Positions 401 to 64,000 of a stretch of DNA of 64,000 bases are shown piece after piece (position 1 is the first letter of the stretch; the number at the start of each line of letters is the position of its first letter). Made by a program: the position numbers and the translations under genes. The notes under the pieces are model-generated. The model saw nothing but the letters and a program-made list of their open reading frames with translations. It was not told the origin of the DNA and did no database searches. The DNA lies in NCBI RefSeq assembly GCF_032062105.1, contig NW_026939314.1, positions 1 through 64,000 on the forward strand, in the 5' to 3' direction. Source of the DNA: Saccostrea cucullata (taxonomy: Eukaryota).

Positions 401-431
<31 letters not shown>

Positions 432-19164: not shown

Positions 19165-19430
19165 CACCCGTGGGGATCCGGGGTAGAATAGGTCCTCAGT
19201 ACCCCTTGCTTGTCGTAAAAGGCGACTAAATGGGGCGGTCCTTCGGATGAGACCGTATAAACCGAGCCCCGTGTCACAGCAGGTCTGGCACGATAAAGAT
19301 CCCTCCCTGCTCAAAGGCCGTAAGTGTCGAGCATAGGCCCAAATTAGCAGCCCTTCACCTGCAATGGTGACGTCTCCATATCAGTGAAAAAATCTAGAGA
19401 GGGATGTTAAACAGTATACAATCAACCAAT
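19165..19430 (+). mobile_element. SINE-like non-autonomous retroposon with (CAAT)n tail and no visible tRNA head
   Basis: TSD CATACCTTGAAA at 19153-64 and 19431-42; a second copy lies at 27318-27590 (-); tail ACAATCAACCAAT. Confidence 0.85.
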
Positions 19431-20953: not shown

Positions 20954-21640
20954 AGTTCATCCTAGTACTTTCTTCGAACATCTAAGCAATTTATTTATGA
21001 ATTTGAAAATTTCCCTTGTATATTCATCTTCGGTACAGAGAATATACTCCACGGATACCTATAAATACCTTATAAAATGATACGGCCAATAAAATAAAAA
21101 AAAGTCAAAGTTTATTTCTTTTCATAAAATGTGTTAATTGCTTAACCGAAGTCTTATTGTTAAATGTGATTAAATGTAATAAGGATTTAAGTTGTTCATC
21201 ACATACATTTACGTTACTACATTTTATGAATTCTTTTATTTGATTAAAACTATAAAAGGATTGAAGTTGTTCATAATAAACATGTTTTATATGTTACTAC
21301 ATTTCAGCTTTCAAGTTTATCAGACAAAATTACAACTTTTACAGTTATTTATAAGGACATTCTGTTCCTAAACACTTCAAATAAAAAAAAAATTCAGGGT
21401 TTTAAATTATTTATAAGGACATTCTGTTCGGAAACAATGCAAATAAAAGAAGTACATGGTTAACAGGAAGTGAAGAAGATAAAGACCATGAATATATAAT
21501 ATTCAACAGGAAATCATAGTGTGTGTAATTCTGATTAGTCGTGAACGGACCTGAGAGGTTGTCATTCGCGGAACTTGATAAGAGCCTGGCGACATTTGAT
21601 TATTTCTTCACTTACTGAGATAGGGGCGAGGTGTTTGGTA

Positions 21641-41283: not shown

Positions 41284-41286
<3 letters not shown>

Positions 41287-41336
<50 letters not shown>
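41287..41336. repeat. (CT)n microsatellite (also 44953-45022; (GA)n at 59329-59376; (TA)n at ~50970-51035)
   Basis: Directly visible dinucleotide runs. Confidence 0.95.
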
Positions 41337-41339
<3 letters not shown>

Positions 41340-41521
41340 ACTTACATTTATTTTAGTGTTTGACTTGAGATTAAGAGTATGTTTAGGGTATTTCGATATT
41401 CGATGTCAAATAACAGATCATCAATATTTAGAATATACAAATCTATAAACACTTATATATGTACATTGTACATTGTACATAATGGTCAATATGACCTTAG
41501 ATTTACAGCACAATTTCATAC

Positions 41522-41826
41522 ATAGTCCCTCCCCTGTTCTCATCCTTTCAATTTATTTGGTTAGTACTTTTCCTTTCTCCTCTGAGTCTAGGACGACCAT
41601 GTGAACCCCCTGCTGGTGACAGAAGTCAATGGAATTCAACATGGACGTCGGTTCCTTGTGGAAGGAGAGACACCGACCACTCACATTGACAAATCCCGGG
41701 GAGCATCTCAAAACCTCTGATCCGGAAATCCCAGGGGAACATTTCAAAGGCTCCGAATTAATGGCGATCAAAACTATATAATCATATAATCTAAATAATA
41801 CAATGGTTCAAGGGTACATTCGTCAT
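41522..41826 (-). pseudogene. C-type lectin exon, copy B (pseudogene)
   Basis: Paralog of 13085-13376 with an insertion disrupting the signal region and an in-frame TAA after KVLTK. No downstream FICE exon follows. Confidence 0.8.
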
Positions 41827-41933
41827 CTAACAGATAATGCTTAAATCTCTAATATGTTCCCACTCTTAAAATTTTATGTTTTCAAATTATATAAAATTTC
41901 ATGTACTTCAATTCACATCAACAAGTCATTGTA

Positions 41934-42979
41934 CGAGGGTTGTCCCAAAAAATCGTAGACAATGTTTATAATTTTTTAATCATGCAACCAATACTTACCA
42001 AATTTTGCAAAGACATAATATAGTCAATGTTCTTTGAAATTGTAAATTTTTAAATATATATCTTTCATATTACTAATATAAGAACGATTTATATGAAGGC
42101 TGATAAGGCCTGTCGGCGCACGGACAAAATTCGGAATAATTTACGCATATAACTATAACATTTGCTTTTATTTCTTTAGTTCTTTATAATACATTGTACT
42201 CAAATTGGAATCACTGAAACCAGAATAAAAAATCTTAATATTATGTCAAAATTTCATATAAATATCATTAGAAATAGGCGATTGGTGTCATGATTTTCAT
42301 AGTATCGTTGAAATTGAGTTTGATGAAAATGACGTCGTCAAACGCGTAGTCGGCGCACAGAGATGTAATAAATTGTGTTGGATATGGTTAATCTACATCG
42401 GAGACGGGGAAAAAAAAGAGTACAGAAGTGACATTTCACACCAGATTTTAATAAAGATGTTATTCTTAAATTGCACGATATTCAATGAGAGGTTTTTTTT
42501 CTGTACCGAAAATAGTTATTTACGGCATGTAAGAAGTAGAGTAGTGTTTGATAAACGCAGACAATTTGGAAAAATCTGGACCGCAAACGACATCAAATAA
42601 TTTGTATTCTCTGCTGCCTTCAATGTAAGGCAATCTTTCGACTAAATTTCGACTGAAATTGAATCTGCTTTAAAAAAAACAAGTAAAAAACAAACGGACA
42701 ATTGTAAATTTAAATATGTCCGTTAATCACGAGTGGTCTATCACTTTAAAAAATTATTGAATGTTAATACCCGCTAGTGAAGCAGACAAGGAGATCATGA
42801 CGTTATAAGAGACGTAATTTACGCTTGCTTTCGTGCGCCGGTGTACACTGACATTCTTTCTTTATTTTTCCATAATTTTCTTATAAGATGTGATATCATC
42901 ATGAAACTTGAAGAAATTTAATAAAGGAAAGGGAAACAAAACTGTCTTACCTGTCTACGACTTTTTGGGACAACCCTCG
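41934..42979. mobile_element. Tc1/mariner-type non-autonomous element
   Basis: TIRs CGAGGGTTGTCCCAAAAAATCGTAGAC and GTCTACGACTTTTTGGGACAACCCTCG; TA TSD; empty site CATTGTAAATATGC at ~13480. Confidence 0.9.
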
Positions 42980-43199
42980 TAAATATGCTAAAATGTCAAT
43001 GATAATGTTGAAGGAGTGGAGTTTCTTTTTATATAATGCATTTCATTTATAACGTACATATACCCTACGGTTTCAAAAATTTTTCCTACAAAAAATGGCT
43101 TAAAATTGAGCACATTTTTAAAGAAACGTCAAGCGGAGTAAAATCGTCATATTTGCTTCAGAAAGAAGACCTATTACAAACTTTCAAATAATTTAAAAG

Positions 43200-44949
43200 T
43201 AATTAAACCTGTTTGTAAAGTTAGAAAAATTTACAACTAAGGCACAAAACATGTATATGTTTTGTTTATGTTTCCGCCCAAGTCAATGTAGCAGCATTTT
43301 TACATGTGCTCGATCCTTTCCTAGCCTCACAGGAGTAAGTAATTATCCAAATTTAAATTATGAGGAAGAAATCTATGTTTAGTTACAATGAATTTTTTAT
43401 ACCTATAGAAAATTAATTCATCGAAATCATCTTCAAGCCATGTACAGAAAATTGATAATTTCAATTATTATGTTTATATAGATGATATAATATCAATTCT
43501 TTTTGAATTTAATTTATATTTGTTTGTAGTTTTTTATCTTCACGAGGTGGAATGTCAGTTCCAAAATTTTTTTCAAAAAAATCCTGTTAATTCGGCTGAC
43601 GTTTGTATGGACAAGGTCCCAGAACAAAATCAAGCAAAGAAACTTTGAATGGCTTTATTTAACGGGTTGATATTTTATCAAAATGCATCATTTCAGATGA
43701 AGTATGCAGAAGAAGAAGCTTTTTACTAGGCTGCCATCAAGGCCAGCAGAACTGTCTAAGAAAGAATTGGAAGTAGCAATCTCTGTTTTTGAGAAAGGTT
43801 TTGGAATTTTCAGATGTTTGAAAGTGTTTCTGTTATAATCTAATTTATGATATTTTGAAATGTTCACAAACTCACAAAAATGGTCATTCCCCTGCAATTG
43901 TACGCGCATTTTTGGGGATACAGAAACGTTGATTTCCGTTGTTAGGTTTTCAGACTAACACAAAGCAGGCATATTGAAAGTTAAAAAAGATGATTCCACA
44001 AAAACTTTGGAAATTCATTGAACCTTATATAACCTGGAAACAGCTTTAAATGTTATGAAAGACATCAGCCTCAATGTCCCTTGTATTGCAAACTGACAAG
44101 GGTGTAATACTGCAGTGCTAAAAGATGAAAATATAACTACAAATGCTCGCAATCCAGAGAGGGCTCTCACACAAATATAACTGTACATGGAGTTAGCCCT
44201 GAAGCTGTTAATGCTAAAGCAGCAGATCATTAACTTTACATCGTTAATGTTATAGGAAACGTTACTTTGATCTGTTTTAGCTGATGAGGTTGAATCCTTG
44301 AAAATTGATGAAATGGATAGAGTTTTTGTCCACAACTGGAATAAATGACTTTGTTAGAAAATTGCCAAAGCGTTTTAATGAAATAGATGACAACGTTAAA
44401 ATACAGTTCAACTTTTAATGTGCCTTTCCAAGTGTTGGTGAATTTCATGCGAGAAATAGGTTTCTGCTTATGATATTGGAGAAGTTCCTGTATATATTAT
44501 CCACCACAGTTAATGTCGGCACAAAAGTGAATTATTTGTTCGCAATGTAATAGCACCAGTCGTTCGAATATGTTAAAACTGACAGTGACATTTCCTAAAA
44601 GAGTTCCCGTTAATGTTATAAACTTACTGTAAGAAACCTTACAAAGAGTTCCTGTTAATTTAAAGAAAGGATATTGTCTGAAATGTTGTTACGTCATTTA
44701 AAAAAGAACTGTCATGGAAAGTGTAAAGATTTAAGCAGAACATGTCGAAATCCAGACTTCTGCAGCTTGGAAAGTCCAGAGAGCTAAGTGAATGCATGTT
44801 GCACAGAAATATGCTTGTTCGAAAATTGTGTTATGTTTCCAGAGCAAAAGCATTTCGAGAATTTACTGTCTGATAGATTTGGCATCATCATTTTTTGATG
44901 CTTTCAACATACGTGGCCCAGAGACAGAATATGTGCTATCAACATGTAC

Positions 44950-45025
<76 letters not shown>

Positions 45026-47470
45026 GACTTACATATATTTTAGATGTTTGACTTGAGATTAAAGTATGTTTGAGAGGTATATTGAACGATTTCGATGTCA
45101 AATAACAGCACACCAATATTTAGATTATACAAATCTATAAACACTTATATATGTACATTGTACATGTTTTGTACATAATTGTCAATATGCCACACATTTG
45201 ATTCCATTACAGCACAATTTCATACATAGTCCTCTCAATAGAAGACAAGAAGTTTCTTCACTTCATGGATCAAGTTTTCAATTTATTTGGTTACCCTTTT
45301 AGACAACCTTACCAGACAACCGGTCAATGGCCCTGCATAGAGCCAAGTCGTTTGATGCCAACTTGCGCTCTAACACAGAAAAGAAAAAACAAGTCGTTGC
45401 TGGTGACAGAAGAACATCAATGGAACCTGTTAAACATGGTACTTACCAATGTTCGCTGTATTCCATTGAAGAAGGAGAGACATTCGTGTGGTGTTTGACC
45501 GTCGGCAAAATATCAAGATGTGTCATTGAATTCTGTGCTTCTTCAAGGAACTTCTGAACAGTCTGGTTGGAAATCCCAGGAAAAGGAACATTTACCATGG
45601 CTACAACATATGTTTTATAATTTCAAAGTACCGATCAAAACTATATATTTCATATAACCAAAACAAACTTCAACAATGTTGATTACCAAATGACTAGACA
45701 TGTATTTGGCAATACTGCATCGCCAGCATGGCCAATTAGATAAAGCTTAGAAAATCTGACTAATATGTACCCACCTTATAAGAATTTTATGTTTTCAAAT
45801 TATATAACAATTTTACCTTGTCGCACTTCAATTCACATCAACAAATAAGATTTCATAAGTTTGTCAAACAGCAGAGAGGTGTAATGTGGACCAAAAAATC
45901 TTAGCAAAGGATTTAAAGGATTTTTTAATCATGCAACCAAGAACTTACCAAATTTTGCAAAGACACCTTTACATAAAGTCAATGTTCTTTGAAATTGTAA
46001 ATTTTTAAATATATATGGCTTTTTACATATTCAATATAAGGAAAATTTATATGAATGATGATAAGTAAAACTGTGGGACGACCCATTACCAAAACTGTAC
46101 AACAAATGGATCTCATATAACTCTATAACATTTGCTTTTATTTCTAGAATGTACAGCGATATTCTTTATAATAGAGAGGTTTTGTACTCAAATCAAAGAA
46201 TGCAGTGGCAGCAACTCAAGTTGTGTGAAGAAAAAATCTACAATCAGCTTTCTATAGGTCAAAATTTCATATAACATATCATTACAAATAGGCTTAGAGT
46301 TGTGTGCATGATTTTCATAGTATCGTTGAAATTGAGTTTGATGAAAATGAACAACTTTCTTCACTGATAGTCAAGTTGTCGGATATATTTCCAATGAAAC
46401 AAGGAGGTTTTAATTTGTGTTGGATATGGTTAATCTTTTTAGCCAACCATCGCAATAGCATCACGTTAGAACAGAATGTAATCCTGCAGATGTAGTGACA
46501 TTGATCACACAACTTAAAGATTCAGCATGGCTTAAATTGCACTGATATACCAATCAGAGGTTTGAACTTGTTAATCCGAAAATAGTTAATTACAGAAGCA
46601 CTAGCTGCAAGCAAGAAGTGGACACAGAAGTTTGATAAACATCAAACCGCTTTTCGGAAAATTTTCATCTTGCAAACAGACTGGTAGGAAATAATTTAAG
46701 TATTCTCTGCTGCAAAGTAAGGCAATCTGTTAGATTTGATCATCCTCAGTTGTTAAGGGACAGTGAACTTGCAATAATTGCGTGTGTTCAAAGAGAGAGT
46801 TATATGGAAGAAATGAAGAAAATGAAAGAGTCAGGCAGAATTCTACACAACAGTACCATCCTATCTCTCTCTCCTGTGTTGGACAGTGAAGGTGTTCACT
46901 TTAAAAAAAGTGAATGAAGCAGAACTAGTGAAGCAGGCAACAGCGCAACCCAATAATTCATGACGTTAAAAACCATCATGTCAGTCACTTGCTTATTTTA
47001 CTTTCATTCAGAAGTCACCGGTGTACACTGCCATTTCACAGAGGGTGCTTTTGCGGCAGGATAATTTTGTTATGAAGAGAAAAGTTTCCTCTTTCATCAG
47101 TGTGATGTGATCATCATGAAACTTCAGTCAACAAAAGAAGTGCATGCTTATAAAATGTTACCCTTTGATACATTTGCTATGACAAGGCACAAAGAAATTT
47201 AATAAAACAATGGGGAAACAAAACTGTCTTACCTGTCTAGTGACGACTTTGAGATTGGGACAACCACAAGTTCGTCTTTTAAATGCGCTAAAATGTCATT
47301 ATGATAATTTTGAAGGAGTGAGTTTCAATTTTGTATCAGATAATTTGCATTTCAAAATTTATAACGTACATATACTTTCCTACGGTTTCAAAAATTTTTC
47401 CTACAAAAAATGGCTTAAAATTGAGCACATTTTTAAAGAAACGTCAAGCGTATAAAATTCATATTTGCTT
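43200..47470 (+). mobile_element. BEL/Pao LTR-retrotransposon gag-pol fragments finely interleaved with a copy of 40030-43140 (probable consensus chimera)
   Basis: Pao motifs appear in the correct order: LPFRQ..LPDNRSMALHRAKSFDANL (45290-45365), IRVVFD (45482), DYQMTRHVFGNTASPA (45681-45727), WDDPLP (46074), GYISNETRRF (46381), NPAD (46480), LSLSPVLDSEG (46861) and HFTEGA (47032). Confidence 0.75.
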
Positions 47471-50400
47471 GCAAGAAAGAGAGACACATATTACAAACTT
47501 GACAGAAATAATTGTTAAAAGTAATTAAACCTTCCCCTTTTTTTGTTTTAACCTTTTCATTATTGGAAAAAGGTGATTTTTAAAGTTTTTCCGGTGTAAC
47601 AATCCAATTGCAAAAACGTGAAAAGGGATGCTCAAGGAATACAAGCCTTGGATGTGATCCTTCTCAAAGACGAGTTTGAAATGAATGCATTGGATATTTT
47701 TTTAACCGTAAATAAATAATTAAATGGAAAACAAGTTTTGTGAAACAATTAGCAGATCTCTTTGTTGAAAGTTAGAAATAATATTTTTTGTCATTTTGTG
47801 TACAAGATGATAATGTGTCATATAGACAAATGTTACATTAACTCTCTTTACGTAACAGTTAGTTAAATATTCATAACGTAATGAAGCCATTTTTGTGTAA
47901 ACATGATAATATATCATAGTTAGAGCAACGGTAAAGGTTTTATTCTAGTTTTAACTTGTCAAAAAGAGAGGACAGGTAAGGGTTTTATTTTAGATTTGAC
48001 TTTTTTTAATTTATAGGCATATATGTATATTATGATACTGTTAAATTCACATGTCTGGATAATTTTTTTGAAATGAAATTTATTTATAGTCATGTCGAGA
48101 AATTATTGATAATGTCAATTATTTTTATTGTAATCAAATATATTTGTCAATGTTTATCTTTTTAAAATTTATAAAGTTATGAAAAACTCTTCACGAAATG
48201 TCAGTTCCAAAATAAATCATGAAACATTATTCCCCTTTTTTGTTTTAACCTTTTCATAAAAGGTGATTTTTAATATTTTGACATGTAACAATCCAACTCA
48301 ACAGGAATTTTGCTACAATCGGAAGGCCTCTTGACATTACTTTGAAATGAATGCATTGGGTATTTCTTTAACTGTAAATAAATAATTAAATCCAGGAAAC
48401 AACTTCAGCAACTCTCTTTGAAAGATGAAATAACAACTGAGTCATTTTGTGTAAACACGATAATGTGCCATATAGAGAGGAAAATGTTATAACTCTCTTT
48501 AACTATCTATTTTTGAAAACATTTTTTAAATTAAATTTTATTGTAGTTTTAACTTGTATAAATAAAAAGGGTTTTCATTTCTAGATTTGACTTTTTTTAT
48601 AGGCATATATGTATTTTTAGTTCACAAATAGTATGAATTCTTTTGACTGAAATTTATGTTAGATATCCGATTTGAATAACTGATATTTTTACTGTAATCA
48701 AAACAGCAAATTATCTCAAATAAAGTTATGAAAAACTCTTGAAGTAAAACCTGAGATAAATCATGAAGAGTTATTCATTTTAAAAGCCTTTTACCTTTTG
48801 TGACATGAAATTAGACATAAGTAACATCTTTTTAAAAAGCTTTTCTAAATCAATCAATATCTGCGTGAGAAGGGATAAACATCTGGAGCATTAGCTTAAT
48901 GGGTTTAAAATATGTACTAAATATTTATTCTGAAAACCTTGTGTAAATGAAACATCATTGTATTTAACTTATAGAAAAAAATAATTTCTACACTGCAAAC
49001 TGAAGAGTTGTTATTCTGTGGGTGTTTTCTTCAAGTGGGGCGATATGCCCTTGGATCTAAATTGATTTCAAACTGCATCGTAACACCTATTGTAAAATAT
49101 GTTATCAAGTCCTGAATTGTAAACATTTTAAAAGATGGATATAATTTGATGCACATTTTTTTTAATTGTATTTTCTCAACTGAAGGAAACAGTAGTAATT
49201 TGTGTTCATTAATATGTTTTTCATAAAAAGGGAGAGGGCGGGGGTAAAGTAAGAAAAATCCAAGATTTTGCACTAGTTTCTTATTTATTGTATACATCTG
49301 AACAAAGATATATGATAGATCATGCATCTGGATACCATGACATGGTATCCAGATGATCATGATTCTATGTCTAAATTTTCATATTGAAATATGTTCAATG
49401 GCAATCACTATATAAATTCAATCAATGAGTTATACATTTATTTAGTTATTGCGTTAATTTGTTTTGGATACTTATTTATCAGCAAGATACTATATTTTGA
49501 TAAGTGTTTTGTATAAATCATTCTTTTATTATAGCTCATGAATAATAGTCTCTAATAAAACATTACCAAATTCTAGAGAATTTGGCGTTCAATATCTTGA
49601 CGTTTTATTGAATCCTGAGTTTTATATCGTGTACGAGTATGCCCGAAACATTCCGAATACGAGCGTTCATTATCGAACGCCCCGTTATAAATAAAAGAGT
49701 CGTCTGACCAAATTCTCTGAGTTAAATTAAAAAAAGATAGTGGCATTTGAGTAAGATGTCTTAATTATTCACACAAAAATAAAATACTGATTAAAACTTT
49801 AGTACACATTAAACATGTTAAACCCATTAAAACATAAAAAAGCAAATCATAACGCTCGGGGGGTCATCAGAATGATGCAATATTGAACACGTCCAGCACA
49901 GGCTTTAGTTTGAATGCTGATACATAAAATATGAGGATATGTTACAGATATCTAATAAAGGAGTTAATGAACATATATTGGTGAATATTTGCACAAATTG
50001 GCTGTTCAAATGCACAAGCTTGAATACAAATATTGTATATATTGCTGAGGTTTTATACTTTGATTTTTGAAGGACAAGTTATAAAGAAAAATATGTCTAT
50101 TTATTTATTGGATTTTCAAAACCTGCTGAATCTTTAACACTGTGTTGTCGTGTCTTTAAATAGATTACATATCTTTAATGAAGTGAACCTTTGTTTTCAC
50201 CAAAAAAATAAGTTCACAAAGATAAGACGGCATTCAGTAGATAACGTCATAGTAATTTAGTTGATGCAAAATTAAAAATTTGAACCAAATTAAATGTAGA
50301 GTTATCTCTCTTGTCTAAGTAAAAGGCTGGAAGTAATCTTTTTTAAATTATCGAATCGATACAGCTTACGTTATGAGTTAAATGGAATTTCACAACGTAT

Positions 50401-50629
50401 TTTTTTTTAAAATCATATCAGCGTGAATCATAAGGAAAGTTGGTAATACAGACATATACAAACTTGATTTTTCTTTTTAAATAGCTATCGATAAACGAGG
50501 ATGGTCTATTGCAAGTACATATAAGACTACTATTATCTTATTAATGACATTGCGTAAGTTTTGATAATAAAACTGATTTAAACGAATTTTATAAGACAAA
50601 ACATTTTTAATTCGTCAAAATGAGAGAGA

Positions 50630-50972
50630 GAAAAGAAAGATATGGAAATAACGAATAGTATTCAATATCAAAGTCCATAAAACAATACAGAATAGGAGCA
50701 TAGCAAACACGGACCTCCGAAGCATCAGAGGTGTGATCAGGTGCCATAGAGTAGTGAGCATCCACTGCTGACCTGTCACAGCCGTTGTGTGCTCCTTGTC
50801 GTGAAATAACGGAAAATCCGTCGTCAATTCAGTGTAAAAATAATGGACTAACAATTAGTATGAAGACGTCAGTCGGCATTTGTCTCAATGATAAATTGTA
50901 TTTGCTGACAATATCATTGTATCGACGATAGAATTTTTACGAAGGGCAAGCTCTTACGTATCGAATCAACAA

Positions 50973-51018
<46 letters not shown>

Positions 51019-51330
51019 TATATATATATATATATACTTACCGTATGCAGATAATAAAGGTATATTGCTGCATAAGTAAGGGAAGTTAACAATAAAAAAG
51101 TTTAAGTCATCAAGTTTATCATATAGCTTGTTAGATTACCATTAACGTTCTTTTCAAGTAAAATATCCAAGTATGAAACATGTGTGTCTCAAACACACCA
51201 AAATATATCGTATATACGTAGGAATGGAAATTACCATTGTTTATGGACAATACGCCGTCGATATATCTAAATTTCATTTCATTTCATTTCACGCTTTAGA
51301 TTTTGCACAAATTCTGCTTCATATGAACAT
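50630..51330 (-). mobile_element. Penelope-like RT 3' fragment (duplicated copy), interrupted by (TA)n
   Basis: Paralog of 17230-17982. Confidence 0.8.
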
Positions 51331-52715
51331 AAGAATTTTCATTTAGCAGGTTTATTATCTAAGAAAAAGAGAAAGAGAAATGGGTGTCACATTAATTTCA
51401 TACACTGGTGCCAGGTATATAAATATTTTCGTATTACACGTGCAGCTTTGTTTAATGAATTAAGGAAAAAAGACTAAAACAGAACTTAAACAAAATTCTC
51501 GTGGATAAAATTTAATACAAACATTGACACATTTCAAATCTTTTTGAGAATGATTTATTTTTTCAATGAAACATAGGAACTGATATTAATTTAAAGTTAT
51601 CTAGTATTCAAAACGGTGCTATTGATTATCTTCTCATCCATTCAGTTACATGAACCATTGAGAAAATAACTTTATATTGATTATGACAGTAGATATTGTA
51701 TGAATTATACCCCTTTATACTGTGCTGAAATTAACACTGAAGTTGAACAAATTTTATTCTGACCTACATTATATTGATTATGACAGTTGAAAAATTAGAT
51801 TTTTTATTTATGTATGAATTATTTATCAAGAGTTTCCTTTATCACTGTGCTGAAATGTACAAACTAACTACTGAAGATTTGATTAAATATATTGCCCTCT
51901 TGTAATTTTCAATAAGCGGTCAAGGTCAAGCACGGCTACTAATTTTGCATTTGATACACTAATTTGATATTCAATGATATCTCACTATGTTTTCATTAAT
52001 TACAAAAGAAATTAACAGTGACTTTGATCTAAGTTATCTAGTTGTGTACATGTATATAGTAAGAAGTTTGACGAGTGTAAATTTTGACGAGAAAAGATAA
52101 ATCGTCAATATAGTCATAATTAGCACATCGTCAAAATTTCCACGTTTACAGTACTCTTGATATCCGTAGACACAAAGGAGTTGATCTAAGTACTGGGATT
52201 TATAAACTCTGCATGAATACAAACAATGACTTTCTGTTAATTAATTAAGACAGTATTAAATTCTATTGCAACACATACCGAAGGTTACATTTTTATGGTT
52301 TCTGTTAATGTTTAAAAAATCTAATTTGATTCTTATTATTTCCTGTACAAAATTGTGGTGTTGCGCTGAAATACATGAATGGTTTAAAATCTAATATCAA
52401 ATTATATATTTCAATGAAATAGGTAAATTATTTAAAGTAATACAATTGTTCATTTGCTGACATTTGCTAAAACCCAAAGCAATCAAACTTGAAGTGCTTT
52501 GGCATGCATATGATTGAGGACAAAGCATATATTGGATGTTTAATCAGTCAAATGTCTGTTGTAATGCAAAGTAATGATTCATATCTTGTTTTGTTTTTAT
52601 ATTTTGGGGGAACTTTCTTTTCTCACAAACATTCTTTATTTGAAATTTTGCAGTATATAAGACGCACATGTTTTAATATTTCATCACCAACTGAACACTA
52701 ACCACAAATACTATA

Positions 52716-52923
52716 CTGTAGATCACTAAATTTTAGCGACACTTTACTTTCGCGAGATAGTCATTGACTCTTGATAAGCGAGACAAAAATTTTGCGAGTT
52801 GTGGATATTGCTCTATATAATCTTAAGGAATACTATTATACGCGAGAATTAAATTTTCGCGAGCACCCTGTCTCGCGTAATTACGCGAAAATAAAGTTCT
52901 TGCGAATCAAAAGTGATTTACAG
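52716..52923. mobile_element. Small TA-TSD MITE (TACTGTA...TACAGTA type)
   Basis: TIRs CTGTAGATCACT and AGTGATTTACAG; internal TCGCGA repeats; absent from copy A. Related ends occur at ~830-908 and ~52040-52153. Confidence 0.7.
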
Positions 52924-53983
52924 TATATTCACTAAAGGAATCAAGTTCATTTGAATTTAAAGTCCAACTAAATACTTATAAAATGAGTATTAACAATTCG
53001 TTATGATTGTAATAATGAAATATGGAGATAAATAACTCTTGTTCAATTTCAACTTCATTAAAATAACACATATCGAAAGCTGACAATTCATTATGAAAAT
53101 AATGGTCGAACAATTAATGTCAAATCACATATTTACTAGGGGTCAAATTTTTGTTGTTTCAGAAAAATATATTGGTTCATGGAGATTTTATTTCGTGTAT
53201 GAAGAACTGATCAAATAGAATCAAATATGTCAGACTCAAAAGTATTTGATATTTTGAATTCACTGGGATATTTTGAGTCGAAATATTGCAGATGCAGCTA
53301 TTATAGTTTATTGATTATATTATCTAATTGAGGAGTCATTAAGAGTTTACAACAATAACGCAAGGAAGCTCTAAACACAGGTACAAAGTTTTTGGACTTG
53401 GAGAAAATTACATCGTATAATTTTTCGCATATTGAGACATTTTTTTCATTTTTCAACCTAGATTTACATTCCTTTATTCTTAGAAAAAAATAATAATAAA
53501 TAACTTTGCTTCAATAAAAACACTATTGTTTTCTTTTATTTGAAAGATACTTGAAATAATCAATTCATTTACTTATCATCCGACCTACATAATCGTAGTA
53601 TATTACTTCTATTATTCATTGTGTACTTTATTATAATTACTTTCTTATATCTACTTCTAACTTTTCGGTGTTTTGTGTTTAGAACTTTCTTGAAAATTCC
53701 GTTGGAAGGCTGTGCATCTGTGGATCAGATTGAGTGTTACTTTTAAAAAAAGAACATGCTGGAGAGTTTTAGAGATGCTCTTAAAGCAGAATTAATTTTG
53801 GCAACATTGATGAAAAAGCAACAACGTTCAACAAGCGATACTGGCAAAAGATAAAATAGGCTAAGACCCCATTACATCCACTATTTTTGGGTCTTCTTTT
53901 ATAATACTGCAACAATTTATCAATTAAAACCTGTTGTCATTCCTGATTTACAAAAAGTAGCATTGATTTTTATTTACTTAATA

Positions 53984-56700: not shown

Positions 56701-57611
56701 ACGGCATTCCACATCAATCACATATGATCAACGTCACTTTTCTACTTGACATACTTTGAAAACCGTTACTACAAATCAACATTAACGTTTACATTTTCAT
56801 CTTTCTAATCTTTTTATCGGTATTTTAAAAAAAAACTTTGAATACAATTTCTTTTTCAATGGCTTATTTAAATATTTCTTAGGTATATGCAAGTTTTGTT
56901 TTTTCCAGGGGGTAAAACTGTATACATGTAGCACGTTAGAAAAAGAAACCACCACCCCACCCCCTTTTCTAATGATATTACATTTAATAAATTGTATGGA
57001 GATTTCATGTAAAATTTACCATGAAATTTCATTGACTTACAAAATGGTGCTGAAATTGCAATTTTTAAGGCTATAATTGTATAAACGCATAAGGTTCCTA
57101 TCGGCACTTTTAGATGACAGGTTCTTATATAAAAATTCTTTTTTTTTTCTGCGTTACATTTAGGTAAGAAAAATACGTAATCTTCGAGTTGCCCGGCCTG
57201 AATATACCATTGCTATAAAAACATTAACAATGTATTTGAAAAGTATAATTAATGATGTATACTTTATTACGTAAATAAAAAGATGATGCTAATTAAAAGC
57301 TAGATAATGCATTAATATATCTTATTAAACATGGGAAATTCCAGTTTAATGTCTTATACTATCTATATTGTATGTCATACAGCTCAGGACATTATTTATT
57401 AAACTGCACTCGTAAATGCTTACAGCAGCGATATTTACCGATTTCAATAATTATTTTGTTAATTACACGTGCAGATTTGCTTGACGAATTAAGGAAAACA
57501 GACATAAACAGAACTTAAACAAAATTATTTTCGTTAAAAATATGCAACCATTGAAACATTTTAAATCTGTTTGAGAATGATTTATGTTTTCAATGAAACA
57601 CAGGGACTGAC

Positions 57612-57830
57612 AGTAGTAAGGGGGGTAGTCTGGGGGCACCTTAGAGGCACCGCCACTCCCCAGGGCCGTCTGGGGTCACCATTCATAGGGTAGTCTGAGG
57701 GCACTTTAAAGGCACCCACCACTCGTAGGGCCGTCTAGGGTCACCACCCTTAGAGGCCGTTTGAGGTCAACTCTCCTAGGGCCGTCTGATATCAACTCTG
57801 TTAGGGGCGTCTGAGGTCACCCATCCCATG
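57612..57830. repeat. GC-rich subterminal short repeats of the putative TIR
   Basis: About seven copies of (A)GGG(CC/TA)GTCTG(A/G)GG(GT/GG)CACC in an otherwise AT-rich window. Confidence 0.75.
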
Positions 57831-58402
57831 AGTTCATTCTTACACATCCATTTTCATTTTCAACCTTGGGGTTTTTTTTTTTTTGTTTTTTTTTTCTAAT
57901 TTTAGGGAGTGGGGCATATATACCCACAAGATAATGACTTGTAACCATTTTTTCCAACACCTGCACAGCTTTCTACTTGTAATTATTCCATTTTAGTGCT
58001 ACAACTAAGGGATTGTCAAGGGTACACCTGAGGTACCCGAGAAATCATTACTATAAAAAGTCCAAACTTTTTCCCAAAAATTTTCACAGTCCATGCAGTC
58101 TTAGTTTAAACGAAGAGGGAGTGTTGGCATCTTGGATTAGTAAGTAATAAATAGTAATACACAGCTTGTTTCTTGTTTCCGTATTAAATTTTGCGATAAA
58201 AAAAAATTCAATACCAGCATCAATAACAACAATAAAAAAAATCTGTATTTTATTAATTAAGTTTTAATTCTTCAATATCAATTGTAAATGTACATGATTT
58301 CACATTTAATATGATAAAACGATCTGCTGACACATATGACCAAAACTTATCAGTACAAAATAAAAAAAAATTACTGTCAGTTCTCTTTAATTCCAGTTGA
58401 CT

Positions 58403-59324
58403 TTACTTAAATTTTTTCATATAATCTTGAACATAGTTCACAAGCATTGAACTTTGAAGTAAATCAACTCGTAGAGAGTCGATTAAATCAGACAGTGCCC
58501 CTAACTCCTCTTTTAAAGGATATTGGGAATCTTGAGGTCTGCATATCATCTGAGCATACCCGGATGACGCTGGGGTATTCATAACTGGAGTCTGAAGTGG
58601 AGTCCAGATGTGTTCAGGAGAAGGAAGGACATGTTCTTGTTTCACTGGGACATATCCTTGTGATCCTTGACACGCTGGAGTCACTGGTGACACAGGGCTA
58701 TACCCTGGTGACGTGGGGCTTGGTGATGCGGGGAGGCTTGGTGACACAGGGCTATACCCTGGTGACATGGGGCTTGGTGATGCGGGGAGGCTTGGTGACA
58801 CAGGGCTATACCCTGGTGACACTGGGCTATATCCTGATGCTGCTGAGGAATAGCCAGATGTCAACGATCCTAAGGTGAACGTACACCTGGTACTAGCTCT
58901 TTTTTCCAAGGCTTCATACTTTCCAGGGTTTTCCCGTCTGTAATTAAAGAACAAAACATAAAGTATCTAACCGAGCATACAAAGTCCTAATCTGTTAAGA
59001 AAATATTGAAAAAAAATGTTCTACATTTAAATTCTAAGACTTTAAACTTTAGAGTTGTTCTGTTTTCAAGATTATTATTCAATCCTTATATTTTTTTTTT
59101 TGTTTATGGTATCATTCTTTTTTTTTTTCGTATCAAAGTTCGACATGTACATTTGTAATACACTTAACTTATGAAAACAACTATACCTAAATGTTTTCAG
59201 CTGTGGATCCTCTTTATCTGTTTCTTGGGTGAACCCTACTTTCCCTTTTTGTTTTACCATTTTCCTTTTTAAAAAAAAATACATTTAAAAAATTTTACAA
59301 TTTAAGCTTACAATTTAAGCAAAT

Positions 59325-59380
<56 letters not shown>

Positions 59381-60243
59381 TCCTTAGAGGTAAGATTTAC
59401 CTTCGAGTTAAAATAATCGAGTCCTCTGACTCGCTCAGTGATCTTTTTATCCCCCTTTTCACTGGCTCTTCTTTCAGTTGGAGGTCTTGGGGGGAATTCC
59501 TAGTTAAACAGAAATTTTAAGACATTTTGTAAAAGAAAATAAAGCAAAATAAAGCAAATATATAAAGAACTACGTACGCTAAATCTCGATCCCAGCCTAC
59601 ATTTTACACCCATTTAATTCAATGATTATTTCGATTTGACCATAAAATCTATGCAAAGAAGACTTCAATGGTAATTGATTAATAATTTTTATACCAGTGT
59701 TTAATTTTTAATAACTCTTATTTCCAGCTGTATTTATATGGGTACACAGCGTTTTCCATTTTAATCGGGCTTGAACGCGTAAGCATATTTCAAAATATTC
59801 TTGGATATAAATAAAAGTTCCTTAAATCTTTCTTATGGTTCACACATATAAAATTAAACAAATGTAATTGATTATATACACTGTTTTAATTGTAAATCCT
59901 TCGGGGGGAAAAAAGAGTTATATCTCTTTGTTTTCTCGACAAAGTAATGTTTTATGAAAATTCAAATTTATATCTAAAGAAATATCAAATGTAGTTAACC
60001 TCTGCAAATGGACTAGGAGGTAGGCGGGGGAACAAAATTATCGTTTGCAGTTCTTTGTAATTTAGAAAAATGCTTATAAATTGGTTTTTTAAATCTGAAT
60101 TTTTTAAATGAGTTACGAATTTTAAGAATATCAACTTACCCCGAATCAAACACCACCTCAAAATCTTTTCCCAACTCTAACCATTCCTTTTCAAAATCTC
60201 CAAATGTCTTTGAAGGCGACGAAGTAAAGAAAGCTTCAGCCAT
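58403..60243 (-). CDS. Novel 271-aa putative nuclear protein with RNA Pol II CTD-like YSPVSP repeats; exons 60243-60140, 59499-59401, 59264-59187, 58937-58403
   Basis: Three GT-AG introns, all phase 2, join into one open frame of 816 nt: MAEAFFTSSPSKTFGDFEKEWLELGKDFEVVFDSG|NSPQDLQLKEEPVKRGIKRSLSESEDSIILTRR|KMVKQKGKVGFTQETDKEDPQLKTFR|RENPGKY...GYSPVSP...YMKKFK*. Confidence 0.75.
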
Positions 60244-60313
60244 CTCTTGTCTTTTGAAGGTTTTTTTTTTTCTGAAGTCAGTTATATTATTTTTTTTTTA
60301 CATTTATCCATCC

Positions 60314-60345
60314 TATTTATATTCCGGGGGGACGAAGGGGCGGGG
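60314..60345 (-). promoter_or_regulatory. TATA box plus GC box upstream of the CTD-like gene
   Basis: Minus strand reads CCCCGCCCC (60345-60337) then TATAAATA (60321-60314), about 70 nt upstream of the ATG at 60243. Confidence 0.6.
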
Positions 60346-60469
60346 CTATAGGATTTTCAATATATTTGTGGATTAGAAAAGGGGTTGCGCGGTAAAAAAA
60401 AATAAAATCGGGCAACCATCTCAATTGTTTTTTATTTAATTTAAAAGTGGTCTCGTTTTTTGACCTTTT

Positions 60470-61775
60470 AGAAAATACCGCGTTATGACTGTGCGCGCGT
60501 TTTCTTTAATTATTCAATGCATCGTATGAGTGTCTAAGCTAATATTCTATGATTATTCTACACATGAAGTAGTACGAAATCGTTTATGTTTCTATTTTTA
60601 TGTTTTATAATTATCCAATACATCTTATATTATATTATCTTATTTTCCCAATCAAGATGCCTCAAAAAGCAGCATGAAAAAAAAGGAACACATACAAATG
60701 TATACACATATAAACACATATTTTTCAAGCACAAAGTTATGTGTTAAACGTGTCGTTGAAAACAAATTTTCAAACTGGGTTTAAAATTTAAAAAAAAAAA
60801 TAAAAATTTAAAAAAAAAAAGGTCAAAATAGTATACATGTATATAAATTTTTGTTCATCATTCTGTGTAACATATTTTTATTAACAAAACCATTTAATCA
60901 GAAAATGAATTTCATCACCCAATAAGCCGGAGATGCATTTGTTACATGCAGTTTCGTTCATTCCTAGTACCAGAATATCTATCAATAATACTAATATTCT
61001 ATAATCATTCTACGCTTGGGGTAATATGAGTCCTATTTTTTCTTTAGCTTTTGCATCTCACCCTATGTTTGATTTTTCTTATTATTAAGGGATAAAAATT
61101 GCTTTTATAAAAAAAAATATATATTTCATACAAACTTGAAAAATAAAACAACACACAAAGTTTTAAATTAATAACAAGTATCTATGCTAATGTTCTATAA
61201 TTATATTCAACACGAGAATGGGAGGTCGTACAAGTTGTATTGTTCATATCCGAGGTTTGATTTTTTCTTTATCATAAAAAAATCATGATATTCTATACGT
61301 TATACACTTTAAATTAAACCGGGTCACACGTGCGCAGAGTATAATTGACAATACATGACTTGATTTATCTACTGTCATTCACAAAGATCACTGAAGCGAG
61401 TTTTTTAAAAGTTCATTTTACCTTTAAAAAAAAACCGCGCGCGCGCGCATTATGACTGCGCGCCTTTGTTGATCATTCATCAATGTATCGTAATTAAGGG
61501 TTTCCATGCTAATATTCTATAATTATTCTACACGTGGGATATTACGAAATCGTTTATGTTTCTATGCTTATGTCCCATGATTATTCCACCAAGACATTGT
61601 ATATGTTTCTATGCTAATATTCTATAATTATTCTTTTGTTTTATTTTTGTATCATATATTATAAAAGGACGATATCCTATATGTGTGTGTGTGTGTGTTC
61701 GTCGTTTCACCCCATTTACATGACACCACTTCTATCTAGTCATTCACAAAGATCATCGAAGTGAGTTTTTAAAAA
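60470..61775. repeat. Dispersed repeated motifs in the intergenic region between the divergent genes
   Basis: CTAATATTCTATAATTATTCTACAC-like motifs at ~60539, 60991, 61187, 61509 and 61614; TCATTCACAAAGATCA at ~61375 and ~61740; GCGCGC blocks at ~60495 and ~61440. Confidence 0.65.
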
Positions 61776-62434
61776 TTGTTCAATCATACTTTGTAAATAA
61801 TTCATTGAAAAAAATCACTTTGTAAATAATTCATTTAAAAAAAATATCACAAATCATTAAATCAAATTCATTTAATTTACAAATAAATTCACGATTTTCT
61901 TTTTTAATGATTTAAAATCAAAGATACTAATCAAGAGTGTGATTATGCTACCGGGTATGTGCTTGTTTGTGTATTTTTAAAAAATCTTTATATCATTTTA
62001 AAAATAATTCATTATCTAAAAAATGCAAGATTGTTCTTTCATTCACGCCCAAAGTACAGAGACCGACAACCAAGACGTGTGTCGTCGTTTTCTAATTTGA
62101 AAATCCTCGTGACCCCAATTATTAAATCACCCGGCCAAAGGTGTTGAAATTATAATAGCTATACCACCCAATATATTAATGTATGAACAATAATGATGCC
62201 CTGTGTAGACCCAATTTAACTCAATTTAACATAAATAAAATAACAGAAAAAAACATTGATTGCATTTGAGAAATGAAAGATATCAGCTAGGCGACGGATG
62301 CGGGAATTTGATCAGAGCTAAAAAACCCGCATCAGAGCACGTGCGTAAACCTAATTGATATCTCCATATATGGGATTCGCGGGTAAAAAGTCATATGACC
62401 AAAAAAAAAACGCCATTATTTCAAGACGGAGAAG

Positions 62435-63918
62435 ATGAGGATGAGACGAAAAGAATTGTGGTTTATGCTCATGGTAACATGCATGCATGTTAAAATTTCT
62501 GAAGGATCGCCTTGGCCCTGCAGAATCTGTCCAATCACTAGTACCGGAATAGCAGACTGTAGACACATCATTTCTGGTTGCGTGAGAGTAATTCCGTGGC
62601 CCCTGGACTATCTCAGAGAGATTATGATGTTTAGTTGTTTAATAAAATTGGAACCCGAGAATGCTAAGCAGTTTGCGAAAAATCGATTCGGGGAGGCGTG
62701 CAATACCAATGGTAAGTATTCAATTTTTTTTCATATATAACTTTTTTTTCTTTGGTAAAACTATATTTAAATATTTGAATTTTTCCAGTTGGAAATGTCC
62801 AAGTTTAATATTTACTCATTTTCCAATTTTCTCTTCACCCCCCCCCCTTTTTTTTTTATTATACGTATCACTCGGTTATTTTTCTCTACGAATATGACCG
62901 AGGAGTTACGAGTGAATGGAATGTTGTGTACATGATTTGTGACGTCACCAAACTTGGGGTAAACAGTATGGTCACCGTGACTTCCCATTCTATTCATTTC
63001 ATTTTTGAAGCATCAGATTATTTTAATGCTACAGACACTAGAATTCGACTGCTAAGTTTTTGTAACAGGTATAGTATATACTAGAGAAAGAGTTCGTATC
63101 AGAACACAAGTTTACTGTTTCAAATTTATTAAACCTGAATCAAATCATGGTACTTCAACCAGAGAAAACTAATTTTAAAAAAATCTGTACATGTTATAAT
63201 TAGTTCATTATTGTTAAATGGGGATGACATCTGGGCAAAAGAAGTTGTACAATACACAAATTTAAGAGTCCTCTATGCACTGTACACTAAAGAGTTCTAA
63301 TTTTGTGGTAGTTATATGCAAATAGTTTTCTGTCCTTGATCATTCATAAAATAAAACAAATTAAAATGTATAATTTATTCCTTAACTTTCACCAAATCAG
63401 GCATTCATAACATTTTAGTAGACCAAGATGAATAGTCAAAGAATTCAAAGAAACACAATATCCTATAAATTTGAAACTGATTGTCGAAAACATTTTGTAA
63501 ATATTTCATGTCAATTGGGAATTGCTAAATGATTTTTTTTTTTCCACAGGTGTACCTAGTTCTACAACTACCCGTGACATTACAGAAACTACTAGGCCTA
63601 CCCTCTCCAAGACTGCTACAAAAACCTTATTGCCAGAATCAAATAGCGAAGACAAGACTTTTGATGACTTCAAAGCAGAAGGTCAGTGTATAAAACTGTC
63701 ATATTCCCTTTATGTATTATGGGACTGATTGTCAAAACAACATTTTGTAAATATTTCATGTCAATTGGGAATTGCTAAATGATTTTTTTTTTCCACAGGT
63801 GTACTTAGTTCTACAACTACCCCTGACCTTACAGAAACTACTAGGCCTACCCTCTCCAAGACCTTAAGGTCGGAATCAGAAAGCGAAGACAAGACTTTTG
63901 ATGACTTCAAGGCAGAAG
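62435..63918 (+). CDS. Secreted or surface protein: signal peptide, Cys-rich (LRRNT-like) domain and tandem Thr/Ser-rich mucin exons; exons 62435-62711, 63550-63681, 63799-63918; incomplete at the window end
   Basis: Hydrophobic leader LWFMLMVTCMHVKISEG; WPCRICPITSTGIADCRHIISGCVRVIPW; donor G|GTAAGT; two phase-1/1 exons (GVPSSTTTRDITETTRPT... and GVLSSTTTPDLTETTRPT...) with CAG| acceptors and |GTCAGT donors. Confidence 0.7.
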
Positions 63919-64000
63919 GTCAGTGTATAAAACTGTCATATTCCCTTTATGTATTATGGGACTGATTGTCAAAACAACATTTTGTAAATATTTCATGTCA

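What the first reader, a model, noticed from the sequence alone, without database searches (positions are those of the whole stretch)
57390..64000. Probable Polinton/Maverick terminus inserted in a duplicated host segment and carrying intron-containing accessory genes
Seen: 57390-57611 is a third copy of a host segment. In the two other copies it continues ...TGA(C/T)|ATTAATTTA; here it breaks exactly after ACTGAC into AGTAGTAAGGGGGG and a ~220-bp GC-rich repetitive block. Established: Polintons start with AG, often (AGT)n, have long TIRs and make 6-bp TSDs. Inference: everything from 57612 on is the arm of a large virus-like element. Its first cargo is two divergently transcribed spliced genes that are not among the canonical core genes (pPolB, INT, ATPase, PRO, MCP/mCP). 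This would be an undescribed accessory module: a nuclear CTD mimic plus a surface glycoprotein.
Basis: partly seen in the sequence, partly recalled or inferred. Interest (0 to 1): 0.85.

Follow-up and report, generated by a model that had tools for sequence, protein, structure and literature searches.

The report
Oyster Polinton end carrying cargo genes
The last 6.4 kb of the window is one end of a large virus-like mobile element (a Polinton/Maverick) lodged in an oyster genome, and it carries two spliced passenger genes that related copies in other oysters also keep; the kind of element is known, but this passenger set seems not to have been described.

Summary
57393-57611 is a third, 220-bp copy of a locally duplicated host stretch. 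At 57612 it gives way to AGTAGTAAG... and a ~220-bp array of seven ~25-bp direct repeats.

The main interpretation is supported, mostly through relatives. Three oyster loci (two in Ostrea edulis, one in Saccostrea echinata) start to match the window at exactly the same base, with unrelated flanks. They stay collinear through the repeat array, a 4-exon disordered protein gene with RNA-polymerase-II-tail-like heptads, and a divergent mucin-like glycoprotein gene. They then run into a protein-primed DNA polymerase gene 8.5-9.7 kb from the end.

A fifth end with the same terminal bases closes a block of packaging ATPase, protease, capsid and integrase genes in one locus.

The window stops 6.4 kb in. 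Its own core genes, second end and target duplication are therefore unseen.

The heptads are expanded only in some lineages, so "CTD mimic" remains speculative.

In two relatives the DNA outside the end is itself Polinton DNA. I read this as nesting, but it is unresolved.

Verdict: a real Polinton-type arm; a known kind of element with a conserved passenger pair I could not find described. Moderate interest.

The parts
57393..57611 (+). Target DNA: third, partial copy of a locally duplicated host stretch. The last six bases (57606-57611, ACTGAC) are the predicted half of a target-site duplication.
   Evidence: 80.6% and 83.7% identity to 18064-18268 and 51419-51583. Both of those continue past the break with sequence absent here. 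The duplication itself could not be tested because only one end is seen.
57612..64000 (+). Terminal arm of an integrated Polinton/Maverick-type element. It runs off the window end.
   Evidence: Collinear with O. edulis L001 (window 57609-60762 to L001 11675-8780, 70-83% nt) and with L002. The same order of end, repeat array, two passenger genes and then polymerase is seen in L001, L002 and L003.
57612..57632 (+). Element terminus: starts AG, with AGT repeated twice. Bases 1-9 and 15-21 are invariant in all five ends compared.
   Evidence: alignments with unrelated flanks outside; it is the only exact match in the window.
57612..57830 (+). Subterminal array of seven direct ~25-bp units. Likely binding sites for the element's integration or replication proteins (inferred).
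   Evidence: Equivalent arrays lie next to the end in L001, L002 and L003.
58403..60243 (-). Passenger gene 1, intact: 4 exons (60243-60140, 59499-59401, 59264-59187, 58937-58403 including the stop), 271 codons. It encodes a disordered Ser/Pro-rich protein with four YSPVSP heptads and a conserved C-terminal helix.
   Evidence: Four collinear tblastn segments to annotated oyster proteins; GT-AG at all three introns; exon lengths sum to a multiple of three. Structure and PDB evidence. The exons were not joined in any tool.
60244..62434 (.). Spacer between the two divergent genes. It holds two copies of a ~150-bp unit with a CG-repeat core (60479-60630 and 61446-61604). Presumed shared promoter region (inferred).
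   Evidence: The unit is also present and repeated in L001 and L002.
62435..64000 (+). Passenger gene 2, 5' part only. Exon 1 (62435-62711) encodes a signal-peptide-like start and a Cys-rich domain. Thr/Ser/Pro-rich exons follow at 63550-63681 and 63799-63918, inside 237-bp tandem exon-plus-intron units (63476-64000). Any exons between 62712 and 63549 are unresolved.
   Evidence: Same place and orientation as a 469-residue mucin-like membrane protein gene in L001 and its counterparts in L002 and L003. Four cysteines are invariant across the four copies.

Best explanation
Bases 57612-64000 are the polymerase-side terminal arm of an integrated Polinton/Maverick-type (polintovirus-like) element. 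The element belongs to a family that, as far as found here, is confined to true oysters.

Shown: the end is at 57612. It begins AG, has AGT twice, and is followed by seven direct ~25-bp units. Next come two divergently oriented, intron-containing passenger genes. The first encodes a 271-codon, largely disordered protein whose Ser/Pro-rich linker carries heptads like those of the RNA polymerase II tail. The second encodes a protein with a signal-peptide-like start, a Cys-rich domain and mucin-like repeats. [quoted passage not shown]

Inferred:
- The end and its repeat array are what the element's integrase joins to host DNA.
- The element's own polymerase starts protein-primed copying there. 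A short terminal reiteration is what such replicons use to slide back.
- The two passenger genes are expressed from the shared 2.2-kb spacer.
- The first passenger acts as a nuclear adaptor or regulator; the second acts as a cell-surface or particle-surface protein.
- The element landed in a 220-bp copy of a locally repeated host stretch.

Whether this copy still has its core genes is unknown, because the window stops 6.4 kb from the end.
For: - Sharp shared end: the window, L001, L002 and L003 align from exactly the same base, with unrelated DNA outside.
- A fifth end, in L001, has the same invariant terminal bases and its own subterminal array.
- Collinearity inward: window 57609-60762 matches L001 at 70-83% nt. 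L001, L002 and L003 are collinear from the end into the polymerase region.
- Polymerase: the L001 open frame 166-3117 (983 codons) matches PF03175 at E=1.6e-18 and the phage DNA polymerase family phrog_1907.
- Core genes tied to the same kind of end: the L001 block that ends with the fifth terminus holds A32-like ATPase, adenain-like protease, double-jelly-roll capsid-like and rve+chromo integrase frames in a row. A matching row is in L003.
- The copies evolved under selection: dN/dS is 0.08-0.12 for the polymerase. For passenger gene 1, pN is far below pS.
- In L002 the end cuts an unrelated 372-codon frame.
- In the window the end cuts a stretch that has two uninterrupted paralogues.
- Passenger gene 2 is homologous by position, orientation and cysteine pattern in all four copies.
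- An end-proximal region of intron-containing passenger genes is a described Maverick feature in nematodes (bioRxiv 10.1101/2022.07.12.499685).
- Mavericks were present in all the mollusc genomes analysed in PMC10294476.
Against: - No core gene is detectable anywhere in the window (tblastn with the L001 frames).
- Only one end of any copy is held. Inverted terminal repeats, target-site duplication and full length are therefore untested.
- The Pfam matches for the ATPase, protease and capsid frames are below the curated cut-offs (E 0.005-0.009). Their order and the strong L001-L003 protein matches carry that argument.
- In L001 and L003 the DNA just outside the shared end is itself Polinton DNA, so the end could there be an internal joint.
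- The third copy of the host stretch is cut off on its left side too, so the 'empty site' reading is weaker than it looks.
- The 5'-AG rule for Polinton ends is from my own knowledge (Kapitonov and Jurka 2006). I could not open that paper.
Confidence: 0.8

Rival explanations
1. The unit bounded by the AGTAGTAAG end is not the end of a whole Polinton. It is either a shorter unit of its own (end, two passenger genes, polymerase part) or an internal joint of Polintons. It appears as a free end in the window only because that copy is a sub-element or a rearranged piece.
For: - In L001 the DNA right outside the end is the C-terminal remnant of a second polymerase gene on the other strand, followed by ATPase, protease, capsid and integrase frames.
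- L003 shows protease, capsid and integrase frames in the same order and orientation outside its end.
- The L001 arm polymerase frame covers only the N-terminal part of the polymerase profiles within the held DNA.
- An inversion of one arm of a single element would give exactly the L001 layout.
Against: - In the window and in L002 the DNA outside the end is not Polinton DNA.
- The L001 core-gene block has its own end of the same kind, followed by other DNA.
- Between L001 and L003 the arm polymerase is about 80% identical in protein, but the outside genes are only 26-47% identical. The two sides therefore have different histories, as expected for one element landing in or beside another.
- The subterminal arrays of the two L001 ends differ.
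Confidence: 0.12
2. This is not exclusive of the best explanation. The window copy may be a dead remnant: an arm that has lost its core genes by deletion or rearrangement, with only the passenger genes surviving, perhaps taken over by the host.
For: - No core gene is seen in the 6.4 kb held.
- Passenger gene 1 is intact and evolves under constraint, which would also fit a domesticated gene.
- Relatives are annotated as ordinary oyster genes.
Against: - In the relatives the polymerase starts 8.5 kb or more from the end, beyond where the window stops. Its absence here therefore says nothing.
- The L001 and L002 arm polymerase frames are open over all that is held.
Confidence: 0.3
3. These are two ordinary host genes in conserved synteny, and the break at 57611 is merely the edge of a host segmental duplication.
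For: - The genes have introns and are annotated as oyster genes.
- The window is rich in local duplications.
Against: - Four copies in three genomes share the block but have unrelated flanks starting at the same base.
- There are two copies on one O. edulis chromosome, 0.8 Mb apart.
- The block continues into a viral-type polymerase.
- The window's host DNA is Saccostrea-like (87-90% nt to S. cucullata). Yet the arm is closest to an O. edulis copy and gives no blastn match to the S. echinata copy.
Confidence: 0.02
4. The end belongs to another transposon superfamily with subterminal repeats, and the polymerase genes nearby are unrelated neighbours.
For: - Subterminal direct repeats are common in several DNA transposon superfamilies (own knowledge).
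- No transposase or integrase lies on the held part of the arm.
Against: - The polymerase region is collinear with the end in three copies from two genera.
- The same terminal bases close a block of Polinton core genes.
- No other transposase domain was found in any frame of the arms.
Confidence: 0.04

Closest known systems
Polintons/Mavericks of nematodes with end-proximal passenger genes (Widen et al., bioRxiv 10.1101/2022.07.12.499685)
   Same: Both are large virus-like elements with a polymerase and an integrase. Both have a region of a few kb next to one terminal repeat that holds intron-containing passenger genes. In the nematode elements a membrane glycoprotein was added to the core set.
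   Different: The nematode passenger region lies between the terminal repeat and the integrase; here it lies on the polymerase side. The nematode passengers are proteases and kinases, and the glycoprotein is a herpesvirus gB-like fusogen. Here the passengers are a disordered Ser/Pro-rich protein and a mucin-like protein with a small Cys-rich domain. No fusogen likeness was found, and none could be tested properly.
Adintoviruses / animal Polintons (Starrett et al. 2021, PMC8502044)
   Same: Both are animal-associated, with polymerase, rve integrase, adenovirus-like capsid, protease and ATPase genes, inverted terminal repeats, integration into host DNA, and lineage-specific accessory genes.
   Different: The accessory genes described there (PLA2-like, gasdermin-like, cupiennin-like, 'Oncoid') are not those seen here. 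That paper mentions no molluscs.
Mollusc Polintons sampled for polymerase phylogeny (Jeong et al. 2023, PMC10748475)
   Same: Both come from marine molluscs and have a protein-primed polymerase. That paper gives the general features: 13-25 kb, 100-1500-bp terminal repeats, 5-8-bp target duplications.
   Different: That work concerns a polymerase subgroup with a VSR nuclease insert, found in a mud snail and a sea slug. No such domain was found in the 983-codon frame of L001. Oysters and passenger genes are not treated.
C-terminal repeat domain of RNA polymerase II largest subunit (RPB1 CTD; Pfam PF05001)
   Same: Both have tandem seven-residue units with Tyr1, Ser2, Pro3, Ser5 and Pro6. A family profile hits only RPB1 tails in the PDB, at E down to 3.7e-9. 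One O. edulis relative passes the Pfam cut-off at 37.7 bits.
   Different: There are four good heptads in the window protein, against dozens in RPB1. There is no polymerase core. The window protein scores 20.2 bits against a cut-off of 20.3. Crassostrea and S. echinata relatives have one or two heptads. The conserved parts of the family lie elsewhere.

Membership tests
Polinton/Maverick (polintovirus-like element) | [quoted passage not shown] | tested here: inconclusive
   None in window 57612-64000 or elsewhere in the window, but the window ends 6.4 kb from the terminus. In three collinear relatives the gene starts 8.5-9.7 kb from the same terminus (PF03175 E=1.6e-18).
Polinton/Maverick (polintovirus-like element) | Retrovirus-like (rve) integrase gene | tested here: inconclusive
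   Not in the window and not on the held parts of the arms. It is present (rve 48-55 bits, plus a chromodomain) in the blocks adjoining the arms in L001 and L003. The L001 block ends in the same terminal bases.
Polinton/Maverick (polintovirus-like element) | Virion module: double-jelly-roll capsid protein, packaging ATPase, adenain-like protease | tested here: inconclusive
   Not in the window. In L001 there are three adjacent frames with sub-threshold Pfam matches (Pox_A32 E=0.005, Peptidase_C5 E=0.009, DJR-like E=0.007). L001 versus L003 protein matches reach 1e-62 for the capsid-like frame.
Polinton/Maverick (polintovirus-like element) | Ends beginning 5'-AG (own knowledge of Kapitonov and Jurka 2006; paper not readable here) | tested here: met
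   All five ends begin AG at the first base shared. The base before it varies.
Polinton/Maverick (polintovirus-like element) | Terminal inverted repeats of 100-1500 bp (PMC10748475) | not tested
   Only one end of each copy is held. No inverted copy of the terminal bases occurs in the window or in the loci. Fetching the other ends was left out; see referred steps.
Polinton/Maverick (polintovirus-like element) | Target-site duplication of 5-8 bp (PMC10748475) | not tested
   This needs the second end. The window's paralogous uninterrupted sites predict ACTGAC.
Polinton/Maverick (polintovirus-like element) | Several copies per genome in unrelated places; length 13-25 kb | tested here: met
   Two copies lie 0.8 Mb apart on one O. 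edulis chromosome, at least two in S. echinata, and one in the window, all with unrelated flanks. The arms are at least 11.6 kb long; full length is unknown.
RPB1 C-terminal repeat (PF05001), for passenger gene 1 | Tandem YSPTSPS-type heptads reaching the Pfam cut-off | tested here: not met
   The window protein scores 20.2 bits against a cut-off of 20.3. The O. edulis relatives score 37.7 bits (P0002, above the cut-off) and 16.7 bits (P0001, below it), and the S. echinata relative gives no match. It is a likeness in a variable linker, not family membership.
RPB1 C-terminal repeat (PF05001), for passenger gene 1 | Repeats attached to an RNA polymerase catalytic subunit | tested here: not met
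   The protein has 271 codons and no other domain. The structure model shows disorder plus two helices.

The most novel reading that the evidence does not exclude
An oyster polintovirus lineage that still moves between oyster genera and is equipped to interfere with host RNA polymerase II transcription and with cell surfaces. The window's host DNA is Saccostrea-like, yet its arm is 75-83% identical in nucleotides, introns included, to a copy in Ostrea edulis, and unalignable by blastn with a copy in Saccostrea echinata. Elements with the same kind of end carry a CTD-like heptad protein, a TATA-binding-protein homologue, PC4 coactivator domains (one fused to a CARD domain) and a fast-evolving mucin-like membrane protein.
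Probability: 0.2. Interest if true: 0.75.

Novelty: new variant of a known kind. Interest (0 to 1): 0.5.

Why it matters
Polintons are thought to be ancient DNA viruses that live mostly as genome residents. What they carry besides their core genes is known for few animal groups.

Here a passenger pair is kept next to the element end across at least two oyster genera, and its better-tested member is under purifying selection. It sits alongside transcription-related passengers (TBP-like, PC4, CARD-PC4) in neighbouring elements of the same kind. This gives concrete candidates for how such elements deal with the host nucleus and cell surface.

It also warns annotators. Genes named 'RPB1-like' or 'uncharacterized LOC...' in oyster genomes can be element passengers, not host genes.

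Oysters suffer from DNA virus disease. A catalogue of their resident virus-like elements has descriptive value for reading oyster genomes and transcriptomes.

Tried and rejected
- Host-synteny reading. I looked up the genomic places of the closest annotated relatives expecting to test synteny. The shared sharp end with unrelated flanks rejected it.
- Pfam on the window's small frames and exons gave nothing beyond the near-threshold CTD repeat.
- An exhaustive phmmer of glycoprotein exon 1 against 1.84 billion representatives gave one hit, a repetitive junk-like protein that I disregard.
- PDB sequence search with the 983-codon polymerase frame found no hit.
- Rfam on 57000-64000 found nothing.
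- The AlphaFold2 model of a full-length relative of passenger gene 1 had mean pLDDT 54 and pTM 0.22. No fold search was run, since a low-confidence model gives meaningless matches.
- The first pattern search for the terminus used a wrong spacer length. It was corrected.
- A second AGTAGTAAG in L003 and one in L001 lack any repeat array, and I take them as chance.
- I tried twice to open Kapitonov and Jurka 2006; it is not held.
- I considered an arm inversion or self-integration to explain L001. I could neither confirm nor exclude it.
- Joined exons: the exons of the two spliced genes were searched one by one by reference.
Full report
**1. What is in the window**

The window is AT-rich DNA without N. 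Bases 57413-57615 match 18064-18268 at 80.6% and 51419-51583 at 83.7%. Those two stretches lie inside a large internal duplication, about 12915-20006 and 41349-53793.

In a three-way alignment the third copy starts to match near 57393 and stops at 57611. The other two continue, alike, with ATTAATTTA.... The third copy is thus only about 220 bp and is cut off on both sides.

From 57612 the window reads AGTAGTAAGGGGGG and then a G+C-rich block to about 57830, with repeat periods of 25, 26 and 65. A short core of the unit occurs seven times at 57628-57809, all in one orientation, and nowhere else in 64 kb.

**2. The two genes**

*Minus strand.* This is a four-exon gene: 60243-60140, 59499-59401, 59264-59187 and 58937-58403 (including the stop).
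- All three introns are GT-AG.
- The exon lengths sum to 813 coding bases, or 271 codons.
- Four collinear tblastn segments match annotated proteins of Saccostrea echinata, Ostrea edulis, Crassostrea gigas and C. angulata.
- The gene is intact.

I tested the model exon by exon, by reference.

*Plus strand.* This gene starts at 62435.
- Exon 1 (to 62711) has a signal-peptide-like start and a Cys-rich stretch.
- At 63550-63681 and 63799-63918 lie Thr/Ser/Pro-rich exons. Each begins and ends in phase 1, inside 237-bp tandem exon-plus-intron units that run off the window.

**3. The decisive comparison**

The last exon of the minus-strand gene finds relatives only in oysters.
- L001 and L002, on one O. 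edulis chromosome, 0.8 Mb apart;
- L003, in S. echinata.

Window 57609-60762 is collinear with L001 at 70-83% nucleotide identity, introns and untranslated parts included.

All three loci begin to match the window at exactly base 57612, and the DNA outside that base is unrelated in all four. This is the signature of a mobile-element end, not of synteny. In L002 the end cuts an unrelated 372-codon frame.

**4. What the arm leads to**

L001, L002 and L003 remain collinear with one another from the end inward, over more than 11 kb. The order is:
1. the repeat array;
2. the disordered-protein gene;
3. a divergent gene for a signal-peptide, Cys-rich, mucin-like membrane protein;
4. a polymerase region.

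The mucin-like gene is seen. The window's exon 1 matches its L001 counterpart at E=3e-7, and four cysteines are invariant over the four copies at 18-28% identity.

In L001 the polymerase frame (166-3117, 983 codons) matches PF03175, the protein-primed organellar and viral family B polymerases, at E=1.6e-18. It also matches the phage DNA polymerase family phrog_1907.

State of this gene in the held parts:
- L001: open over 983 codons.
- L002: open over all 929 codons held, with no stop and no frameshift.
- L003: one stop and one frameshift.

Between copies the polymerase shows dN/dS of 0.08-0.12. For the disordered-protein gene, pN is far below pS against L002 and L003, and dN/dS is 0.46 against L001. 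The copies therefore diverged while functional.

**5. The same kind of end closes a core-gene block**

In L001 a second end lies about 8.8 kb further on. It has its own subterminal array, and the same bases are invariant: positions 1-9 and 15-21 of the window's end.

The block it closes holds, in a row on one strand:
- an A32-like ATPase frame, an adenain-like protease frame and a double-jelly-roll capsid-like frame (each below the Pfam cut-off);
- two unknown frames;
- an rve integrase with a chromodomain;
- a CARD-plus-PC4 protein.

L003 shows protease, capsid-like, integrase, a TATA-binding-protein homologue (E=7e-20) and a PC4 protein in the same order. In L003 the capsid-like gene has one stop, the integrase has at least one frameshift, and no ATPase was detected.

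This ties the terminal bases to elements with the full Polinton core set. PMC10748475 gives the general features of the class: 13-25 kb, 100-1500-bp inverted repeats, 5-8-bp duplications.

**6. An unresolved point**

In L001 and L003 these core-gene blocks lie just outside the shared arm end.

In L001 the first thing outside the end is the C-terminal remnant (about 145 codons) of a second polymerase gene on the other strand. It matches the C-terminal part of phrog_1907; the arm's frame matches the N-terminal part. That gene is interrupted once.

I favour one element having landed in or beside another, for three reasons:
- Between L001 and L003 the arm polymerase is about 80% identical in protein, while the outside genes are 26-47% identical.
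- The two L001 ends have different subterminal arrays.
- The window and L002 have non-Polinton DNA outside the end.

An inversion of one arm, or an internal joint, is not excluded.

**7. The passenger proteins**

*Disordered-protein family.* A profile search finds 33 proteins. All the annotated family members are from Ostreidae; the two weakest matches are RPB1 proteins hit through their own CTD repeats. The conserved parts of the family are:
- an acidic/aromatic N-terminal motif;
- a basic patch;
- a short helix;
- a 35-residue C-terminal helix.

The structure model is otherwise disordered: mean pLDDT 54, with helices at 105-127 and 241-275 of the S. echinata protein.

The RNA-polymerase-II-tail-like heptads lie in the variable linker. 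There are four in the window, about a dozen in one O. edulis copy, and one or two in Crassostrea and S. echinata. The window protein misses the Pfam cut-off by 0.1 bit. A family profile hits only RPB1 tails in the PDB.

'CTD mimic' is thus a lineage-specific possibility, not the family's defining trait. My best guess, an inference at about 0.25, is a nuclear adaptor whose linker is a substrate or docking site for proline-directed kinases and tail-binding factors.

*Second passenger.* By architecture this is a type I mucin-like membrane protein with a fast-evolving Cys-rich head. No relative was found outside these loci.

**8. Host and spread**

A host exon at 9207-9611 finds fibrinogen-related lectin genes of Saccostrea (92% to S. 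cucullata). Window 8872-12843 is 87-90% identical in nucleotides to that S. cucullata locus. The host is therefore Saccostrea-like.

Yet the arm is closest to an O. edulis copy and gives no blastn match to the S. echinata copy. This hints at several element lineages shared across genera, possibly by horizontal spread. I could not measure host divergence between the genera here.

**9. Literature**

- Mavericks were present in all the mollusc genomes analysed in PMC10294476.
- End-proximal, intron-containing passenger genes and an added membrane fusogen are described for nematode Mavericks.
- The accessory genes listed for adintoviruses are different ones.
- I found no description of this oyster passenger pair. 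That is absence of evidence only.

Noticed in passing
L001 about 11676-20483: Outside the shared arm end lies a second Polinton-like block. It holds a C-terminal remnant of another polymerase gene, then ATPase-like, protease-like, capsid-like, two unknown and rve+chromo integrase frames, and a CARD+PC4 fusion protein. It is closed by its own end of the same kind with a different subterminal array.
   Followed up: partly
L003 about 15708-21181: The S. echinata neighbour block has protease, capsid-like and integrase genes, a TATA-binding-protein homologue (PF00352, E=7e-20) and a PC4-domain protein. Together with the CTD-like protein this makes a theme of RNA polymerase II-related passengers. 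Several of its genes are broken (counts are in the report).
   Followed up: partly
window 8872-12843; 12915-20006 and 41349-53793: The host part of the window is a cluster of fibrinogen-related/PAN lectin-type genes with a large internal duplication. It is 87-90% identical in nucleotides to a Saccostrea cucullata contig, so the host is Saccostrea-like but not that assembly.
   Followed up: partly
window 57612-60762 versus L001 and L003: The arm in this Saccostrea-like host is 70-83% identical (introns included) to an Ostrea edulis copy. It gives no blastn match to the Saccostrea echinata copy. This suggests element lineages shared across genera, possibly by horizontal spread.
   Followed up: partly
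window 60479-60630 and 61446-61604: A ~150-bp unit with a CG-repeat core occurs twice in the spacer between the divergent genes. It is also repeated in the same spacer of L001 and L002, so it may be a conserved regulatory unit.
   Followed up: no
window 63476-64000; L003 4574-5679; L001 5768-6475; L002 5586-6039: The mucin-like repeats are built differently in different copies. In the window and in S. echinata they are tandem ~240-bp exon-plus-intron units with phase-1 exons. In the O. edulis copies they are 33-bp or 39-bp repeats inside one exon.
   Followed up: partly
L002 11576-12694: The element end cuts a 372-codon open frame with a Cys-rich start and no Pfam match. It is probably part of another repeat family.
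   Followed up: no
protein P0011 (S. echinata LOC133180114): This annotated gene model reads through from the disordered-protein gene into the subterminal repeat array, giving a tail of GWVTPDGF-like repeats. It is probably an annotation artefact, and it shows a second copy on the same contig.
   Followed up: no
window 59329-59376; 41285-41337; 44951-45023: A (GA)24 microsatellite lies in intron 2 of passenger gene 1. Long CT/GA runs also occur in the host duplication. L001 has a CT run at the matching place in its intron.
   Followed up: no
window 14501-14788, 20462-20901, 25529-25701: These stretches match their own reverse complement at 72-76% identity (palindrome-like repeats) in the host part of the window.
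   Followed up: no
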